DNA of 64,000 bases from Asterias rubens (GCF_902459465.1 NC_047081.1:1798001-1862000); one strand, 5' to 3'; counted from the first letter of the stretch, positions 54,941 through 64,000 are shown. A program made the numbers and translations. Notes: a model not told the origin generated them from the letters alone.

Positions 54941-56731
54941 TATGTACAATGTTGTTTGAGGATTGGGGAACTATCTTACAGAGTTTATCACAGTTCTTCA
55001 GTGAACAGTTTCAGCATCATTCTGAAAGATATTCAAGTTATCAGAATTTGGGGAGATTCAGTGCATCGCTGCGCTGTTGACCATTCGTGATGTGTTGTAC
55101 ATTAATTGGAAAGGACTCGTAGAAACGTCAAGTAGAAGACCAGTCATCGTTCTGATGTAACAGCAGCTCTGACTGCCCTTTGCGTTCCAAACTAATGGCG
55201 CAATCAGAGTTGGAGAGTGACCAATTGTTGGGAAATGAAAAGTAAAGGAGTCTCCATGTTGTTCAACAGCCAATGGAAACACAGCGAAATACATTGATTG
55301 CAATCACGATGTGGGTTCATAATTCAAAGGGCTAAAACAAACAAGCAAAACCCAAAGCAATCATTTTGCCTTAGAGAAGAAAAACAACCGTCAAATTGTA
55401 CGGAAGCGCGTGTGTTGTTATCGACTGTAATTTAGTATGACTACATTTTAAAGGCAGTGTATACCGTTGGTAATTGTCAAAGACCAGTATCCTAACTTGG
55501 TGCATCACAAGAGTAGGGCAAGGGGAGGGGGGGGGGGTTACAAAATGTCTGAGAATGGCTTCATGTTCTCTAATTCAAATTTGAGGGTGAAACATTACCC
55601 CTTTCTCTAAAACTATACATTTAAGGGACTGTCTTGGATCGGGCGAGTTTGTCTGTGAAAAGCATTCACTTTGAAACCGTTTGTTATGAAATGCATTATG
55701 GTTAGAAAGATGTTTATCACAGTAGTAATAACACATGCCTCGAAATTGCGTGGGTTTAAGTTTTATTTGCGAACTAACAAGGTCGGCCTTTTCGTGGAGT
55801 CTAAAATTTGACTCCACAAAATGGCGTATCGTGTTAGTTCACGACGTTAACGAGGGTAATTTCGAATGGTGTATTTTATACTATCACCAGCTCTCCAATG
55901 CTCTTTACCTAGTAAATTTTAATGGCCAGAATCTTTTGGAGTACTTTTATCGGATACAAACTCTCCTTTTAAGTCGTCTTCAAGTGTTCGTTAGAGACGG
56001 ACGATGTAGCAGATTCATTAAAATGTTTCCATCACATAAAAAGAAACCTTGAAGTCGAGTGTTTTGATAAAAGACATCATACTCGCAGTTTAATATAACA
56101 ATTGCAGTAAATGATGATAACTGTCTTTTTTCGGCACATTCTCAGTATTGCACGTGTAGATCATCTGAGCACGCGCATACTGAAAAGAACTTTCAAAAAT
56201 GACCGACCAAACGCCTCCCAATCAAGTGCAGTAACATGCTCGGAATGCCACGATCGCAATATGTTTACTCTCACTGTCTTTATATACATACAGTTATTCG
56301 GCAATAGTTTCAATTAAAGTCATGTTTTCAACTGATGAATTAACCTCACATCTCATACTCGTAGTATTCACACGACGTCTGATTTCTCCAGGTAGTAATC
56401 GCACCGTTGATCTTACCCGGGTTCATCTGGCAGTCAAGTGAGTGAGTTAGGCTGAAAGAACGGCAGCTACACTCCTTTGCGCACGCCAGGCAACACTGCA
56501 TTGGGCTCGTTACTTTCACGGTGTGGATCGGGTCGGGGCAGAGTCCGCTAGGTTTAGGCATCGAGGTACATCTAAGAGTTATGGGTGAGATTGGTCCAGC
56601 AGTAGCCGGTGTCTTGCAGAGTGTGAATTTGGGGTATTTTACATCGCATTGCGGCCCTTCCCATGTCCCGTCCGTGTGCCTCATTACCGTGCACGCATTT
56701 TCAGTAGAGGGTTCAACACCATCCAACCAAT

Positions 56732-57222: not shown

Positions 57223-58199
57223 TATGGCGGGCCCGCGAGCTATCCTCGCGTCCAGAAACAGGTAGCACGAACCGCCATGTTGCTTCCAAAGATGGGGTTG
57301 CTGCAGCCTTGCGCATGAAAGTTGAGCTGACTGTAAAGTACCTACCATCTTCCACACGAAGACAAGGCACACGACGAGTAGTTTCATGGTGTACAATGCT
57401 GATTGAGGATTGGTGAACTATATTACACAGTTTATCATAACAGTACTTCAGCGAACAGTTTAATCATCAAGTGCATTCAAATTGAATCAGAACTTTGTGG
57501 GAATCTGTTTTCATCGCTGCGCTGTTGATCGAGTCCTTGAGTTGGAAAGGACTCGTTGAAACGTAAAGTAGAAATCAGCCATCATTTTAATGAACAATAG
57601 GCTCAATTAGTACCCCTTTGTTGGAGAGTGGCCAATTAAAAAACAAAAGAGTCTCCAAGTCGTTCAACAGCCAATGATAGCAGAGCAAAATGCATGCATG
57701 ATGAATATTCATAACTCGAAGGGCCAGCTGAGTTCAAAGGGCGAAGAACATGCGGGGTCTGTTTTGTATTCATATTTGATAATTGATATGACATTTTGGT
57801 AAATGTCAAAGACTTTTATACTTACTTGGTGTTGGCCTATACCAACATTTGAATGCATAAAATATGCAAACCTGTGATGTTCTGGGCCCAATTGATCATC
57901 GAAATTGCAATAAGTTATTAATAAAAGAAAACAAGAACCATCATGTTGCATTTAAACATTGTGTGCTTTCAGATGTCTGATACAGATTCGAATTTTGAGA
58001 TGAAACAAAATGATATCCTTTTCTAAAACTGGCGTTCTCATGGGGTTGTTTTTCAACAAAATAATCAGAAGCGGTCCTGTGCATACAAAATTTGCAATAA
58101 AATGTATAAGTCTAAGGAGTAATTTCCAAAGGCATCCTCTCCTTTTATTTTCCTCCAATTTCGATCCTTGAATCAAAACCCATTTGTCTCTTCTTGAAG

Positions 58200-60650
58200 T
58201 CACCATTTTGAATCCGCTGGCAGGGCTTGGAATAAGGGCTCCAGGAGCGTTTCCCGCACAGTGCGTGAAATATCGTCCCACGTGAATATCTTGACCCCTT
58301 CACAGTATTCAGGGTAGGGGTCAATGGGGTCCAAAGCAAACGGCTCGTCGTAGTCTTTGCTATAAAAAATCAAAACAAGACACACAGCCATTATGGTTAC
58401 TTAAAAAATGAAAAATGGGATGGGGGTGGACTGTATAGAGTAAAGCCATTCATCCAAAGTGTACTGTGTTGGTAGAGTCATATTCCTTTACATGCTAGAC
58501 TGGACCTCTCCACATATCCATAAGGGGACGGGTCTCAAATTGTTACTTTTATTGTTTATGTGTATTAATCTTTTGGTTTTTACCCATACACCGATGTGTG
58601 TTAGCACTGTATACTCAGTACTTTCCCGAGTCATGTGACCAAATATCACAGGCATGTTACTCGGGTGGGATTCGAACCCACGACCCTTGCAATTCTAGAG
58701 CAGTGTTTTACCAACTAGACTACCGAGGTTTGCCCGGTTGCTAGAGGCAGTTCGAATCCTATGTTTTGGCAGCGGGTACCACAACGATGTGGTTAAAACA
58801 TTTTTTACCAATAAACCATTTTGTTCTCAATTTGATGACTAAGCCATGCCTCAAAGTTAAATGACATGGGGAGTCATATTCATTGATATCCTAGACTTTG
58901 GACCATTCTACACATCTAAAAGGGGGTAGATCTCAGAGTTTTTTTTAAGGGACAGACAGCTATTTCAACTCATTTGTACTATGCACATTTTTAGCATGGA
59001 TTTATTGAGTTCACCCCTTACCCTTGTGAGCTTTCGAAAACAATATTTTCAACACCTTAAAAACATGTGAGTTTTCCTGCTCATAGTAATTTGTGTTAAA
59101 AAAAATGTTTTTTAAACCTTGCAAGAATCTTTCGCCATTTTTCATCTGATACTCGTCTCGGGTAGGCCCGCCGTTCACTCTCATCCCAGGTGATCTTGAT
59201 ATTCTTCCAGTCACTCAGCAGGAGTAGAACCTCCTTCAGCCCGGCAGCAAGCCCGAACCCCTCCCCGGCACCACTCCCCTCCCAACAGTGGACAACGAAC
59301 AACTCAAAGAACCGACCGTTGGGTTTATCCCTTCGGAGTCTGAGCCGATTCCACCTCCAGCACTTGATCATCAGAATCAAATCTTTTACATTTTGGGGAA
59401 GGCTCTGGTTGAAACGATGGCGGATGTCACCCAAGGTTGCCTGGTAGGGAAGCTTATCCGTGTCCTGCATGAACTGGCGGTACATTGTTTCTTTAACAGC
59501 TGTTGAAATGAAAGGATATATGAAGAGACTAGACATTAATAGTAAACTTTCGGGTTCACCCATGTTTCTCTTTTTGTGGGATTGTTGGCTCTGAAAATAG
59601 CCGGTGTGGTCTCGACAGTATACTCTGCTCGTCTTCAGGAGGAGTTGATATTTAATTCAAATTTTACCCCATTTGTCATGATGTGGGACTTGCTCAAGTT
59701 TATTGGTTGTTATGAGTGACGCACGTAGCCTGTGCTAGGAGCCGCCATGTTTGGCTGGAGCATAACATGACATGCATGTTGCAGTGGTTCAGAACTAACC
59801 AGGATTGACGCTCATTGACGTCTGGACGTCGCAGGTTCCAATCCCTTTCAAGTCAAAATGTGTCTTTGTTCCAAATCAACAACTATTTACTGGTGTACGA
59901 AATGATGTCTCTGTAATGAAACAATATAAAGGCAGACTCACATTTACTTGGATTCGCTCCGATGAGGTCCACAGCCGGCATGACCGTTCCGTCATACCAC
60001 TCGTTATTTACCATGATCCTGACTTGAACTGCCCCGTCCTTTAGGCTCTCCTGCCCCCGCAGTCTCACCGCGTCATGTACGCCTCCGGCCTTCAGGAGAT
60101 CTCTTGTTTGAGCCAGTACAGCCTGGATTCCCTTACGGTAGTCTCCAATACTCCGGAAATCTGACAGGTAGAGGGAAAGTTGGAACTCGACATCCTCTTG
60201 TGTCGAGGTCGTTCCCGAAACGAGGTCACCACTCTGCCGAAGAAGGAATGATTTAATTAACACAATGTCAAATAAGCCTGTTGTATGCACGAACAGACGG
60301 CTCCACTTATCAAAGGGTTGGATCTAGGTAAGTCTGTATAAATGGACATGGGATACTTATGTGCTAATAGTTTTTGCCACCTAAACACCCCTTTTAGATC
60401 ACGTGGAACAGTCCAGTTTGGGATATCAATGAATATGACTCCCCGGGTCATTACACTTTGGAGAACCATAATTCCTTACCACGGAGGTCCTGGCAATAGA
60501 GTACGATGCCTGTTTCGTGATGTAGAGAACGAGGTTGCGAAGCACCTGTGCAACCTCGTCTGCAAAATGGTCCCCGTGGCGTAGATGGGTGGACACGAAT
60601 GACGTCAGACCTTTGGGAGTCAATTCCCACGGGGAGGCCTCGCTGGTCAT
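58200..60650 (-). CDS. 2'-5'-oligoadenylate synthetase (OAS)-like protein, single OAS unit, 4 exons, 332 aa, catalytic motifs degenerate
   Basis: Exons 60480-60650, 59948-60233, 59118-59499, 58200-58359 (phases 0,1,2). OAS-like blocks: VMPAVD (cf. VLPAFD), VKDLILMIKCW (LKSLIRLVKHW), FELFVVHCWE (LELLTVYAWE), GLKEVLLLL, PFALDPIDP (PVILDPADP). The first intron sits immediately before the GGS-equivalent motif, as in vertebrate OAS1. An acceptor 7 nt upstream of the ATG suggests an unlocated upstream exon. Confidence 0.88.
58575..58790 (-). mobile_element. Second tRNA-derived SINE family, in OAS-like intron 3
   Basis: A-box-like TAGTCTAGTTGG and B-box GGTTCGAATCCC, followed by a body shared with about 47440-47580. 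Confidence 0.68.
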
Positions 60651-63187
60651 TGTCCTACTATAAATAAGTCAGTAAAAGATAGTTAGCCGGTAGAAGCATA
60701 CCAACTAAGATACTTTGGAACGCTAGGTGGCAGTAGACTTACCAGGTCAACTTCCATTGTTTACATTCTCACCTTTTCGAAACCAATGAACTAAACCACT
60801 CTAGTATGGTCCCGTAATAACAGCCTAAACCAAAATAACAAACATTTTGCGGCAACTCTTTTTCTAGCTTCAAAAGTTTACACCATCGAGGAAATTAAAT
60901 TGTCATCTTTTCATTAAAAGAAATTACCAAATTACGTGGACAAGTTTGCAAGTACGCTATAGTTTGATGAGAATTCACGTTTCGGAACTTAGTTCATAAT
61001 AAGGTCAATATTTGAAACTTCACAGCTGAAAAATGGTAACAAAGAAAAGAACACAGATTCAAATCTCTCAGCTTAATTTCTAAGCTGTTTTGTATCAACA
61101 CTCACCCCTAGATGTGTAAATCGCTCGCCGGCAGGAAAAACTCGAAAATGACGACTGTGGCTTTAAGGCGAAAAGCACAACTGACGTTTAGGAGTTGCTG
61201 TGATTTCCACAGCTCGTTTTAAAATAGTGGTTGATCATCAACACATAAACTACTTGTAACGAAACGAACGCTCTCCAAGTAAAGTAAACATTTCAGTTTT
61301 ATGAGTTAAACCAAGGTTAAACAGAACACTGGGGGAGAAAAACAGACAACGCAGTGTAATGTCTACTACGTGTCGTGTCGCATTTTGAACATTGAAAATC
61401 AACCTTCCCTAAAAAAATAAACTATTCCTACCTTTGACTATCACGTGGCCACTTCATAGTCTATTCCCTCCCATATTTGCCAGGAGTTAATAGCTTTTAA
61501 AGTCCACTCTAAACTCTCCAAACATCATAATGGGTAATGGATAAATACGGTCTCACAGAGACCCTGGCAACAGTAGACGCCATGTTAAGACCGCGTGTGT
61601 GAATCCAATACTACATAAATAAACCTCTGCACTTAATACACTCGGTACCGATTGTAATGCTTGCACTTTGGATTCAGACACTTGAACCGGACTAATTAAA
61701 CAGTTACACAAGTTCATAATTGTCTTACAACGACCTTTACATCGGTTTATACAAACAGAGGCTAAACGTCTGGCGTCACACTTCGTGGCACGCCATATTA
61801 TACCAGCCTAGGGATGCTTTTTTTTTTTTTTTTCTTTTTTTAACAGTGAGGGGTTTTATACTTTTTACCATTAGACATTCATTACGGTGTCGCCATCTTG
61901 ATTTTACTCCATTCCATATCATTGTTACCAAACTGAGGCTGGACGAAATAATAGTCTGGTGCCATGTTTATGCAATGAATATTAGCATTCATGGAAACAG
62001 GGAACACGACTAAGATGGTGTCAGCGTGATGACGGTCTATTCATTGCTTGAGTAGGAGACTACGTTGCGAGGGGCGAGGTGTACAAAACGGCGTTATAGA
62101 AACGTAGTCTGCACTCGAGATCGGAATTGGGTGTGTTACAGTGCAAAACCCCTCGTTGCGGTGTATCAAAAAAGGATGACCGGATGCTGCCAGATGTATC
62201 TTTGACCTCGCATTCATTTCACATGGAGATTTTTAGTAAATTCACATGTACATGTACCGGTCAAAACAATGGAGGACAAATATTACGCAGACGCTGCATT
62301 TTTATGGGCGGCCACATACAACTTAATGTTTACTATCTTCTGAACCGCGATATCTTACCCCCCCCCCCCCCCGAGTAACAGAAACGATAAGGCTTAAATG
62401 AAATAAAGTCAACACAAGTTGTAACTGTTAACATTATTTAATAACCAAATCATGCATACATATCAATTCTGAAGAAATAAAAATCACATTATTATTTATC
62501 ATACATAATTACTCTTTTCGGATATATTACATTTTTACAATTGGTTGGCACATGCCCAGAGATTTTAATCGGAAATATTGTGATGACAGATCATTCTAAT
62601 TTGATAAGAAATTGTATAACTTTATAGAATTTAAGGGAAACCTTTTGCTTATCAATGTTTCAATTTGCAATAATCAAAATTCAATTTTGAATAATAATGT
62701 AAGTAATCATATCTTTATTGGAAATTTTAAGTTAGTATCGGTTTTTTTTATTACATTTAATAAATGTATTAATCGTTATTATTGTTGTTTTTTGCTCTTA
62801 AAAATTCAAGTTTAAATAAATTTGTCAGATCTTCAAATTTGTGCGCACTTTTATATGAATACATTCGCAACTTGAGAAATTATTAAAGTTTTTTGCAGAA
62901 TTTTTAAAGATATTATACAGGGTGGATAAGGATAACAATAATCGTCATTGTTAAAAAATGTTTAGTCTGAAAGCTTAGTAGAAACTAAAGTTAATACCAG
63001 AAACATTTTTCCTATGAATTTGTATTCTTCCATTATTCTCTTGCAACTTATTGAGTCAACATTTTTCACAGATAAGTTTAATTTCATGCATGTTGGGATA
63101 CATCAAGTGAGAATACATTACTGGTCTTTGACAATTACTAAACGTGTTCATATAGCACCTTTAAGAAAACATGAACCAAAAGTTTTT

Positions 63188-64000
63188 TTAACGGCAACCA
63201 CATTCCTCAACCACCATGTCCTCGTGATGTTTCATAACAATGTTCCCGTGCTCCAGGTAGATCATACTCAACGCAGATAACTTAGTCGGAACACAGCACG
63301 GTTCCGGCGCCATGTCCGGTCTCCCTGTCGACCGCACCATGTTCTGCATAATGGCGTGGTTGCTCGGATTATCCGCGGATCCGAGCGGTCCGGCACATCT
63401 CCCGGCGCACCTGTACGCATTGAATCGTTTCGGGTAGACGATCCAGCTGGCCCAGCCACTGGTGTAGAAGTCCACATCCATCTTGACTCTCCTACAGGTT
63501 CCGGCGTCCCGGCTCTGAGCTATGATCTCACGTAGTAGTTTCTCCTGGATTAGTCGTTCCTGTTCCGCCTTGTTTGCTGAGCTGTAGTGATGTTTCTTCT
63601 CCTTCTTGTTCTTGCGTGATGATGCGCCCCGTTGAGTGCGGACTTTGACTGAGCTCTGAGCGTCGTCGATGATGTTGACCGGCTGCAGTGCACGTGAGAA
63701 GACTACCAGCGTGACATCCTCTAATCCACCGGTGCTGTCGACAGTTTCCTCTCTCTGTGGGATCTCACCAGAGCCGGTCGCTTCGTCGTCGAACAGTGAG
63801 AACGAGGATGAAGATGATGAAAGCGATGAAAACGAAGAGAGCTCTGCTTCGTCTGAGAAAGAGTTCACCGAGTCCTCCGAGCTCTCCGCACCATCACTCA
63901 CTGTGCGGATCTCAAGTTCGTATTTCCCGCGCAGAAAATTGTCCTCACGGAACCAGTGACGTAATCCCTCCGTGACGTCAAACACCTCACTTCCGTCGTA
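63188..64000 (-). CDS. nodal: Nodal (TGF-beta family ligand), 3' coding region: end of prodomain plus mature domain; continues past the right edge
   Basis: Frame open from 64000 to the stop at 63188. Cystine-knot pattern CRRVKMDVDF..GW..WIVYPKRFNAYRC.G.C...NHAIMQ...CCVPTKL..LSM.Y.EHG......HHEDMVVEECGCR is Nodal-typical; RTQR furin-type site upstream. Confidence 0.9.
   Translation of the reverse strand, partial: YDGSEVFDVTEGLRHWFREDNFLRGKYELEIRTVSDGAESSEDSVNSFSDEAELSSFSSLSSSSSSFSLFDDEATGSGEIPQREETVDSTGGLEDVTLVVFSRALQPVNIIDDAQSSVKVRTQRGASSRKNKKEKKHHYSSANKAEQERLIQEKLLREIIAQSRDAGTCRRVKMDVDFYTSGWASWIVYPKRFNAYRCAGRCAGPLGSADNPSNHAIMQNMVRSTGRPDMAPEPCCVPTKLSALSMIYLEHGNIVMKHHEDMVVEECGCR

What the first reader, a model, noticed from the sequence alone, without database searches (positions are those of the whole stretch)
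58200..60650. Intact OAS-like gene with a systematically dismantled nucleotidyltransferase active site (candidate pseudoenzyme sensor or regulator)
Seen in sequence: four exons splice in phase to an uninterrupted 332-aa OAS fold with canonical splice sites. Established: OAS1 needs the GS P-loop (GGSSGKGT) and D75/D77/D148, and Y230 contributes to nucleotide binding. My manual alignment gives SGDLVSGT (GS->GD, K->S), EFQLSLYL opposite DADLVVFL (D77->Q; an alternative register gives DVE), GTVMPAVD opposite FDVLPAFD (D148->T) and PNGRFFEL opposite PPQYALEL (Y->R). The structural C-lobe motifs and the K213 equivalent are kept. Inference: a retained but catalytically dead OAS in an invertebrate deuterostome. 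It would parallel vertebrate OASL but has no ubiquitin-like tail here, and could act as a dsRNA binder, decoy or scaffold.
Basis: partly seen in the sequence, partly recalled or inferred. Interest (0 to 1): 0.75.

Follow-up and report, generated by a model that had tools for sequence, protein, structure and literature searches.

The report
Conserved catalytically dead OAS in starfish
This starfish gene is intact and transcribed, and it encodes a relative of the antiviral enzyme OAS that has lost its catalytic residues yet has been kept by selection in sea stars and feather stars, so it most likely works by binding something rather than by making the 2-5A signal.

Summary
A 2.2-kb RNA contig reproduces every junction and adds a 5'UTR exon at 61106-61402.

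The C-lobe is a clear Pfam OAS1_C match. Three alignment methods place E73, Q75 and T140 at human OAS1 D75, D77 and D148, D60 at S63, S63 at K66, and R217 at Y230. K213 is kept.

It is not a decaying pseudogene as a family:
- Orthologues with the same intron positions exist in Patiria and Acanthaster, and more distant ones in two crinoids.
- They form a 100/100 clade apart from the many canonical sea-star OAS paralogues, nearly all of which keep every catalytic residue.
- Patiria-Acanthaster dN/dS is about 0.2 in both lobes.

The dsRNA-groove positions K60 and K199 are not basic in the sea stars and R195 is basic only in Patiria, so a classical dsRNA sensor is doubtful. There is no ubiquitin-like tail.

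Verdict: a new, independently evolved member of the known class of OAS pseudoenzymes. One caveat is a frameshift allele seen in one DNA run.

The parts
61106..61402 (-). 5' untranslated exon (its 5' end may lie further upstream)
   Evidence: X5 contig record 24 joins 61106 to 60657. The donor is GT and the acceptor AG. It has no in-frame ORF extension.
60480..60657 (-). Exon with the start codon (ATG at 60650-60648). It encodes residues 1-57, the N-terminal helices.
   Evidence: An in-frame stop lies three codons upstream of the ATG.
59942..60233 (-). Coding exon 2, residues 58-155: the N-lobe core with the degenerate P-loop and the former metal-binding strands
   Evidence: There is no NTP_transf_2 Pfam hit, and only a weak match to OAS3 domain I on its own.
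60210..60233 (-). P-loop remnant SGDLVSGT. D60 stands at OAS1 S63, and S63 stands at OAS1 K66.
60180..60188 (-). E73-F74-Q75, standing at OAS1 D75-A76-D77 (first and second metal ligands)
59985..59987 (-). T140, standing at OAS1 D148 (third metal ligand)
   Evidence: Human OASL has the same substitution, T152 (PMC4446440).
59118..59499 (-). Coding exon 3, residues 155-282: the C-lobe
   Evidence: Pfam OAS1_C, E 5.9e-12. PDB hits are OAS2, OAS1, OAS3 and OASL.
59363..59365 (-). K200, the retained equivalent of OAS1 K213
   Evidence: It is invariant in every OAS compared.
59312..59347 (-). Clade-specific basic stretch RLRLRR (206-211) up to R217, which stands at OAS1 Y230
   Evidence: The [RK]-L-x-L-R motif is found only in the echinoderm dead clade.
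58200..58359 (-). Last coding stretch, residues 282-334 plus the stop codon. It holds the DPIDP motif and the C-terminal helix. No ubiquitin-like tail follows.
57300..58199 (-). 3' untranslated region, continuous with the last coding exon. It extends about 20 nt beyond 57300.
   Evidence: X5 record 24 and X1 record 1 cover 57300-58359 without a break.

Best explanation
[quoted passage not shown] It keeps the whole two-lobe OAS fold, but it has lost the P-loop serine and lysine, at least two of the three metal-binding carboxylates and the Y230 equivalent. It therefore cannot polymerise ATP by the two-metal mechanism that every active OAS uses.

The loss is old. The same orthologous lineage, with the same kind of damage, is present in valvatid and forcipulatid sea stars and in crinoids. 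It sits beside an expanded set of catalytically intact OAS paralogues and has been kept under purifying selection.

Mechanism (inferred, not shown): it acts by binding, not by synthesis. The most likely role is as a regulator or adaptor of the active sea-star OAS paralogues, in the manner proposed for mouse Oas1b towards Oas1a. The classical dsRNA-groove positions K60 and K199 are not basic in the sea stars, R195 is basic only in Patiria, and the protein is not basic overall. RNA binding through a different, clade-specific basic patch ([RK]LxLR, K200) is nearly as likely.

I put about 0.8 on 'selected, non-catalytic OAS paralogue'. Within that, about 0.35 goes to protein-level regulation of active paralogues, about 0.3 to non-canonical RNA binding, and the rest to other binding roles.
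For: Shown:
- Intact 334-aa ORF with GT-AG introns.
- Spliced RNA contigs reproduce all junctions, and the start codon is fixed by an upstream in-frame stop.
- Pfam OAS1_C, E 5.9e-12.
- A profile of the clade hits OAS2, OAS1, OAS3 and OASL full-length at E 1e-48 to 1e-18.
- Key columns (Asterias/Patiria/Acanthaster/Anneissia/Antedon): S63 = D/D/D/S/E, K66 = S/G/G/K/K, D75 = E/E/E/H/F, D77 = Q/Q/H/N/D, D148 = T/T/T/N/T (K in a further sea star), Y230 = R/R/R/E/E, K213 = K in all. In contrast, 15 canonical OAS, and 16 of 19 further sea-star paralogues, keep S, K, D, D, D and Y.
- Conserved exon lengths and phases, 171/292-304/382/160-175, in three sea stars.
- The clade has 100/100 support, and its internal topology follows the species tree.
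- dN/dS for Patiria-Acanthaster is 0.18-0.21 with dS 0.72-0.84. The N-lobe is 0.21 and the C-lobe 0.16.
- The AF2 model of the Patiria orthologue has pLDDT 90.4 and pTM 0.90, with only the P-loop block weak.

Established knowledge:
- D75, D77 and D148 are the metal ligands required for 2-5A synthesis (PMC6019448, PMC4446440).
- S63 binds the donor triphosphate (PMC4446440).
- OASL is inactive partly because its third carboxylate is Thr (PMC4446440).
- R195E and K199E abolish RNA binding (PMC3961380).
- Inactive Oas1b may negatively regulate Oas1a (PMC3856407).
Against: - No assay has been done. Inactivity is a sequence inference.
- Sea stars keep a [DE]-x-E pair two residues N-terminal of the canonical D-x-D columns, and an acidic residue two positions before T140. 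K213 and much of the cleft are also conserved, so some nucleotide or metal binding cannot be excluded.
- The structure was predicted for the Patiria orthologue (53-54% identical), not for the Asterias protein. No residue-level superposition was available.
- One DNA run (X4, organism C) carries a 5-nt deletion at 58296 that frameshifts the last 33 codons.
- No protein for this gene from Asterias rubens or A. amurensis turned up in the protein collection, although their canonical paralogues did.
- dS to Asterias is saturated, so selection on the Asterias branch itself is not measured.
- The proposed partner or ligand is a guess by analogy.
Confidence: 0.75

Rival explanations
1. It is a dsRNA-binding sensor or decoy that uses the classical OAS groove (the reader's suggestion, like the OAS-like domain of OASL or OAS3 domain I).
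Against: The groove columns are not basic. K60 is V/V/V/M/V, where every full-length canonical sea-star paralogue has K or, in two cases, Q or R (P0080 is gapped there). K66 is S/G/G in sea stars. R195 is H/R/L/S/S. K199 is Q/Q/Q in sea stars. Single R195E or K199E changes abolish RNA binding in human OAS1 (PMC3961380). The pI is 5.3-7.7, against about 8-9.3 for most canonical relatives. The groove columns are also variable among canonical invertebrate OAS, so this test is not sharp.
Confidence: 0.2
2. It is still an enzyme, using a shifted or non-canonical set of acidic residues. In sea stars these would be D/E71 and E73 on strand beta2 and D/E138 before T140. It might make a different nucleotide product.
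For: The [DE]-x-E pair and the acidic residue at position -2 of T140 are conserved in all three sea stars, and by beta-strand parity they lie on the same face as the canonical ligands. K213 is invariant. The cleft motifs are replaced by clade-specific but conserved residues rather than random ones. N-lobe dN/dS is 0.21.
Against: The candidate replacements are not shared by crinoids, which have T at -2 of the D148 column and H or F at the D75 column. The D148 column varies (T/N/K) within the clade, as expected for an unconstrained site. The P-loop Ser is replaced by an acid that would repel a triphosphate, and K66 and Y230 are gone. Pfam NTP_transf_2 is found in many canonical paralogues but in no member of this clade. 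In the AF2 model, residue 71 lies in a helical turn before the strand.
Confidence: 0.07
3. In the genus Asterias the gene is a young pseudogene on its way out. It is still transcribed but no longer needed.
For: A 5-nt frameshifting deletion occurs in the last coding exon in one DNA run. No annotated Asterias protein for this gene was found in the protein collection. Three of the seven coding variants seen are non-synonymous.
Against: The window copy has a complete ORF with all splice sites. The RNA contigs of organism A carry no frameshift. The Asterias terminal branch (0.46) is only slightly longer than the path from the sea-star node to Patiria or Acanthaster (0.37 and 0.36). Three non-synonymous to four synonymous changes corresponds to roughly dN/dS 0.25. 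The family-wide constraint is clear.
Confidence: 0.05

Closest known systems
Human OASL, OAS-like domain (PDB 4XQ7)
   Different: OASL carries two C-terminal ubiquitin-like domains that are needed for RIG-I enhancement, and it binds dsRNA through a basic groove (PMC4446440). The starfish protein ends at residue 334 with no tail and lacks most of the groove basic residues. Its origin is independent: the starfish clade branches among invertebrate OAS.
Mouse Oas1b and other inactive single-domain Oas1 paralogues
   Same: It is a stand-alone, single-domain, catalytically inactive OAS1-type protein that coexists with active paralogues. Oas1b is proposed to act as a negative regulator of Oas1a (PMC3856407). 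NCBI's pipeline even named the crinoid orthologue 'inactive 2'-5'-oligoadenylate synthase 1B-like'.
   Different: Oas1b is a recent rodent duplicate that localises to the endoplasmic reticulum (PMC3856407). The starfish protein has no hydrophobic tail (sequence reading). It is also an old lineage shared by sea stars and crinoids. The NCBI name is an automatic best-hit label, not an orthology statement.
N-terminal pseudo-domains of OAS2 and OAS3 (PDB 9H1Z, 4S3N)
   Same: These are inactive OAS units with degenerate triads. OAS2 is the best sequence hit of the clade profile (E 1.3e-48), and OAS3 domain I is the only hit of the N-lobe exon alone.
   Different: Those units are covalently fused to an active domain and serve dsRNA binding and length measurement. 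This protein is a separate gene product.
Canonical sea-star OAS paralogues (e.g. Acanthaster P0042, Patiria P0064-P0078, Asterias rubens P0080)
   Same: They have the same fold and length, occur in the same genomes and carry the same Pfam OAS1_C domain.
   Different: Nearly all of them keep K60, S63, K66, D75, D77, D148, K213 and Y230, and many hit Pfam NTP_transf_2. They fall in other parts of the tree.

Membership tests
OAS family (2'-5'-oligoadenylate synthetase fold) | OAS1_C C-terminal lobe (Pfam PF10421) | tested here: met
   Exon 3 alone scores E 5.9e-12 and 46 bits against a cutoff of 19.9. The orthologues carry PF10421.
OAS family (2'-5'-oligoadenylate synthetase fold) | Full two-lobe OAS architecture, closest in structure to solved OAS proteins | tested here: met
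Catalytically active OAS (2-5A synthetase) | Three metal-binding carboxylates at the D75, D77 and D148 columns | tested here: not met
   E73, Q75 and T140 stand there. Only one acidic residue is left, and none at the second and third positions. The requirement comes from PMC6019448 and PMC4446440.
Catalytically active OAS (2-5A synthetase) | P-loop G-S with the following lysine (S63, K66) | tested here: not met
   The loop is SGDLVSGT: D stands at S63 and S at K66, with a one-residue insertion. The role of S63 is described in PMC4446440.
Catalytically active OAS (2-5A synthetase) | dsRNA-dependent synthesis of 2'-5' oligoadenylates | not testable with these tools
   This needs recombinant protein and an NTP incorporation assay.
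OASL-type pseudoenzyme | Incomplete catalytic triad | tested here: met
   The third ligand is Thr, as in OASL T152 (PMC4446440).
OASL-type pseudoenzyme | C-terminal tandem ubiquitin-like domains | tested here: not met
   The stop is at 58200-58202 inside the last exon, and the transcript contig continues as 3'UTR. The orthologues are 326-343 aa with only PF10421.
OASL-type pseudoenzyme | Basic dsRNA-binding groove | tested here: inconclusive
   The columns of OAS1 K60, R195 and K199 read V, H and Q in Asterias, and are mostly non-basic in the clade. No electrostatic surface could be computed, and the columns also vary among canonical invertebrate OAS.
Unprocessed pseudogene | Disabled reading frame or splice sites, no constraint | tested here: not met
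   The ORF and splice sites are intact. The mRNA is spliced. dN/dS is about 0.2 between orthologues. As a caveat, one frameshift allele was seen in run X4.

The most novel reading that the evidence does not exclude
The remodelled former active-site cleft is a ligand pocket. Its features are the retained K213, clade-specific conserved residues replacing the YS, Y230 and DPANP motifs, and an 'active-like' closed conformation in the model. On this reading, the protein would serve as a receptor or effector-adaptor for the nucleotide signal made by the active OAS or cGLR-type paralogues. Echinoderms fall outside the vertebrate lineage in which the OAS-RNase L pathway is thought to have arisen (PMC10400998).
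Probability: 0.07. Interest if true: 0.8.

Novelty: new member of a known kind. Interest (0 to 1): 0.45.

Why it matters
Catalytically dead OAS proteins are known and important in vertebrates: OASL, Oas1b, and the N-terminal units of OAS2 and OAS3. All of those are vertebrate inventions.

This finding shows an independent, much older case. It is a stand-alone dead OAS maintained since before sea stars and crinoids split, next to a large family of intact paralogues. Echinoderms are not reported to have the vertebrate effector RNase L (PMC10400998 places the origin of the pathway near jawed vertebrates).

That makes the protein a tractable entry point to two questions: what OAS proteins do in invertebrates, and whether non-enzymatic use of the OAS fold is an ancient theme. 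I found no paper describing it.

It is not a new kind of system, and its function remains inferred.

Tried and rejected
1. Getting the Asterias protein as a database object. The spliced protein has no single reference. Two word-indexed searches, one with the Patiria orthologue and one with an alignment that included the four Asterias exon translations, returned no Asterias entry. Structure prediction was therefore run on the Patiria orthologue instead.

2. dN/dS involving Asterias. dS is saturated (NG86 gives 3.4 or undefined), so only the Patiria-Acanthaster pair is usable.

3. A fourth sea-star orthologue on an ENA contig (L003). It has an apparent frameshift inside exon 2 in a '2x' low-coverage assembly, so I used it only for motif states and not for rates.

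4. Microsynteny. Patiria, Acanthaster and L003 have a 7tm_1 GPCR upstream. The window has none; the last exon of nodal lies upstream instead. Orthology therefore rests on the tree and the intron positions, not on synteny.

5. The P0003/P0058 fragments carry the clade's C-lobe signature, but their source organism could not be resolved because the sample was too large to fetch.

6. The alternative 'DVE' register was considered and rejected as the canonical alignment. All three alignment methods, with posteriors of 0.85-0.95 or higher, place E-F-Q at D-A-D. It is kept as a rival explanation.

7. The ESM Atlas look-up added nothing beyond 'OAS family'.

8. Not done: a residue-level structural superposition and an electrostatic surface, because the tools return no coordinates.

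Full report
**Observation**

I assembled four coding exons: 60650-60480, 60233-59942, 59499-59118 and 58359-58200. They total 1005 nt, all introns are GT-AG, and they encode 334 aa without an internal stop.

Public reads confirm the splicing. A 2227-nt contig of run X5 lies on the window as 57300-58359 | 59118-59499 | 59942-60233 | 60480-60657 | 61106-61402. An RNA contig of X1 joins 58359 to 59118. Shorter contigs of X1 and X2, the latter from a second species about 2% different, stop exactly at exon borders.

The mRNA therefore has an extra 5'UTR exon and a 3'UTR of at least 900 nt. An in-frame stop three codons before the ATG fixes the start. No ubiquitin-like tail is encoded. A tblastn of the protein against the window finds no second copy.

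**What it is**

Exon 3 alone is a significant Pfam OAS1_C match (E 5.9e-12) and hits OAS2, OAS1, OAS3 and OASL in the PDB. Exon 2, the catalytic N-lobe, has no Pfam hit and only a marginal match to the inactive domain I of OAS3.

An exhaustive HMMER search with exon 3 found only 56 relatives. The closest are a 339-aa Patiria miniata protein (54% identical) and, through it, a 342-aa Acanthaster planci protein. A profile search added two crinoid proteins (Anneissia, Antedon) and sea-star fragments from environmental assemblies.

That fits these relatives and the Asterias paralogues found later.

**Active site**

Three independent alignments agree on the register:
- phmmer of exon 2 against OAS3 domain I;
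- a clade profile and the Patiria sequence against porcine OAS1, with high posteriors at the motif columns;
- MAFFT L-INS-i with 15-27 canonical OAS.

In the order Asterias/Patiria/Acanthaster/Anneissia/Antedon, the columns of human OAS1 read:

| OAS1 column | Residues in the five proteins |
|---|---|
| S63 | D/D/D/S/E |
| K66 | S/G/G/K/K |
| D75 | E/E/E/H/F |
| D77 | Q/Q/H/N/D |
| D148 | T/T/T/N/T |
| K213 | K in all |
| Y230 | R/R/R/E/E |

One exception to the agreement is that the profile alignment places F rather than R opposite Y230.

A further sea star has K at the D148 column. By contrast, 15 canonical invertebrate and vertebrate-type OAS, and 16 of 19 additional sea-star paralogues, keep S, K, D, D, D, K and Y.

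The three aspartates are the metal ligands required for 2-5A synthesis (PMC6019448, PMC4446440), and S63 holds the donor triphosphate (PMC4446440). The former catalytic columns differ between lineages of the clade while the protein as a whole is conserved. That is the pattern expected when catalysis, but not the protein, has been given up. Human OASL is inactive in part because its third carboxylate is also a threonine (PMC4446440).

**Not a pseudogene at the family level**

Patiria and Acanthaster genes have the same four coding exons, with lengths 171/292-304/382/172-175 and the same phases. Their dN/dS is 0.18-0.21 at an unsaturated dS of 0.72-0.84, with 0.21 for the N-lobe and 0.16 for the C-lobe.

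In a maximum-likelihood tree the sea-star and crinoid proteins form a clade with 100/100 support. Its internal order follows the species tree. It is separate from the canonical echinoderm OAS, and the Asterias branch is not markedly long. The lineage therefore predates the asteroid-crinoid split.

Sea stars also carry many intact paralogues: at least ten in Patiria, and several in Acanthaster, A. amurensis and A. rubens.

**Structure**

The spliced Asterias protein has no single reference, so I folded the Patiria orthologue with a 27-row alignment that included the Asterias exon translations. The result was pLDDT 90.4 and pTM 0.90, with only the P-loop block (residues 61-70) weak.

|---|---|
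| OASL OLD | 28.8 |
| dsRNA-bound OAS1 | 28.4-28.5 |
| OAS3-DI | 27.8 |
| OAS2 | 27.6 |
| apo OAS1 | 25.6 |
| CdnC (next family) | 19.7 |

The model thus resembles the closed, 'active-like' state, as the constitutively folded OASL domain does (PMC4446440).

**How it probably works**

Synthesis of 2-5A by the canonical mechanism is excluded by sequence, so the protein must act by binding.
- The K60 column is V or M, where the canonical sea-star paralogues almost all have K.
- K66 is S or G in sea stars.
- R195 is H/R/L/S/S.
- K199 is Q in all sea stars. Single R195E or K199E changes abolish RNA binding by human OAS1 (PMC3961380).
- The proteins have pI 5.3-7.7, against about 8-9.3 for most canonical relatives.

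On the other side, K213 is kept. A clade-specific [RK]-L-x-L-R motif follows it. Several cleft motifs are replaced by clade-specific invariant residues rather than random ones: P172 and T176 in place of the 'YS..A' motif, D296 in DPxDP, Y301 and W252.

I therefore favour a regulator or adaptor of the active paralogues, by analogy with mouse Oas1b, which may restrain Oas1a (PMC3856407). Non-canonical RNA binding is a close second. Both are inference.

**Caveats**

- A DNA contig from run X4 (a differently labelled organism, about 1.6% divergent) has a 5-nt deletion at 58296. It replaces the last 33 residues by an unrelated extension.
- Of the seven coding single-base variants seen, four are synonymous and three are not. 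One of them, W204R, is present in every run laid, so the window carries the minority allele.
- No Asterias protein for this gene was found in the protein collection.
- dS to Asterias is saturated.
- Sea stars, but not crinoids, keep a [DE]-x-E pair two residues before the canonical columns and an acidic residue before T140. This keeps a small probability alive for residual metal or nucleotide binding.

**Comparison and novelty**

The protein is a member of the OAS family by sequence and fold. It fails the defining features of an active synthetase. It resembles OASL in its dead triad, the Thr at the third site and the best structural match, but it lacks the ubiquitin-like tail. It resembles mouse Oas1b in being a stand-alone inactive paralogue beside active ones, but it is far older and has no membrane anchor.

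NCBI's pipeline has automatically named one crinoid orthologue 'inactive ... 1B-like'. I found no paper that describes an echinoderm OAS pseudoenzyme, and two OAS evolution papers do not mention echinoderms at all. The OAS-RNase L pathway itself is thought to have arisen near the jawed vertebrates (PMC10400998), so the downstream biology of any echinoderm OAS is open.

I class this as a new, independently evolved member of a known kind, of moderate interest.

Noticed in passing
window 58571-58788 (intron 3): A tRNA-derived SINE lies here. ARAGORN calls a tRNA-Ser(aga)-like gene at 58656-58729 on the minus strand, and laid read depth there is 10^5 to 10^6, so it is a very high-copy element.
   Followed up: partly
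window 59467-59663, about 60660-60845, 61831-62027, 63013-63200: These are further very high-depth bins in the laid runs, so repeats. They lie in the introns and upstream region of the gene, and many spurious joints map to them.
   Followed up: no
window 63188-63985 (-): A 265-aa ORF ends in a TGF_beta domain (E 1e-31). The OAS-like 5'UTR exon begins about 1.8 kb downstream of it. In Patiria, Acanthaster and an ENA sea-star contig, the upstream neighbour is instead a 7tm_1 GPCR.
   Followed up: partly
window 58292-58300 (last coding exon): Run X4 (DNA, organism C) has a 5-nt deletion here that frameshifts from codon 302 and extends the ORF to 415 codons. RNA contigs of organism A do not carry it.
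   Followed up: partly
window 59351-59353 (codon 204): The window has TGG (W). X1, X5 and X4, the three runs with coverage at this site, read CGG (R), which matches the basic residue in Patiria and Acanthaster.
   Followed up: yes
P0079 (Asterias rubens) and P0081 (Asterias amurensis), not in the window: These two otherwise canonical Asterias OAS paralogues show N at the D148 column in the alignment. This may be a second, independent loss of the third metal ligand in the genus.
   Followed up: no
window 56346-56726 (-): A 126-aa ORF downstream of the gene has weak PAN-domain matches below the Pfam cutoffs. The 3'UTR of the OAS-like mRNA ends close to 57280.
   Followed up: no
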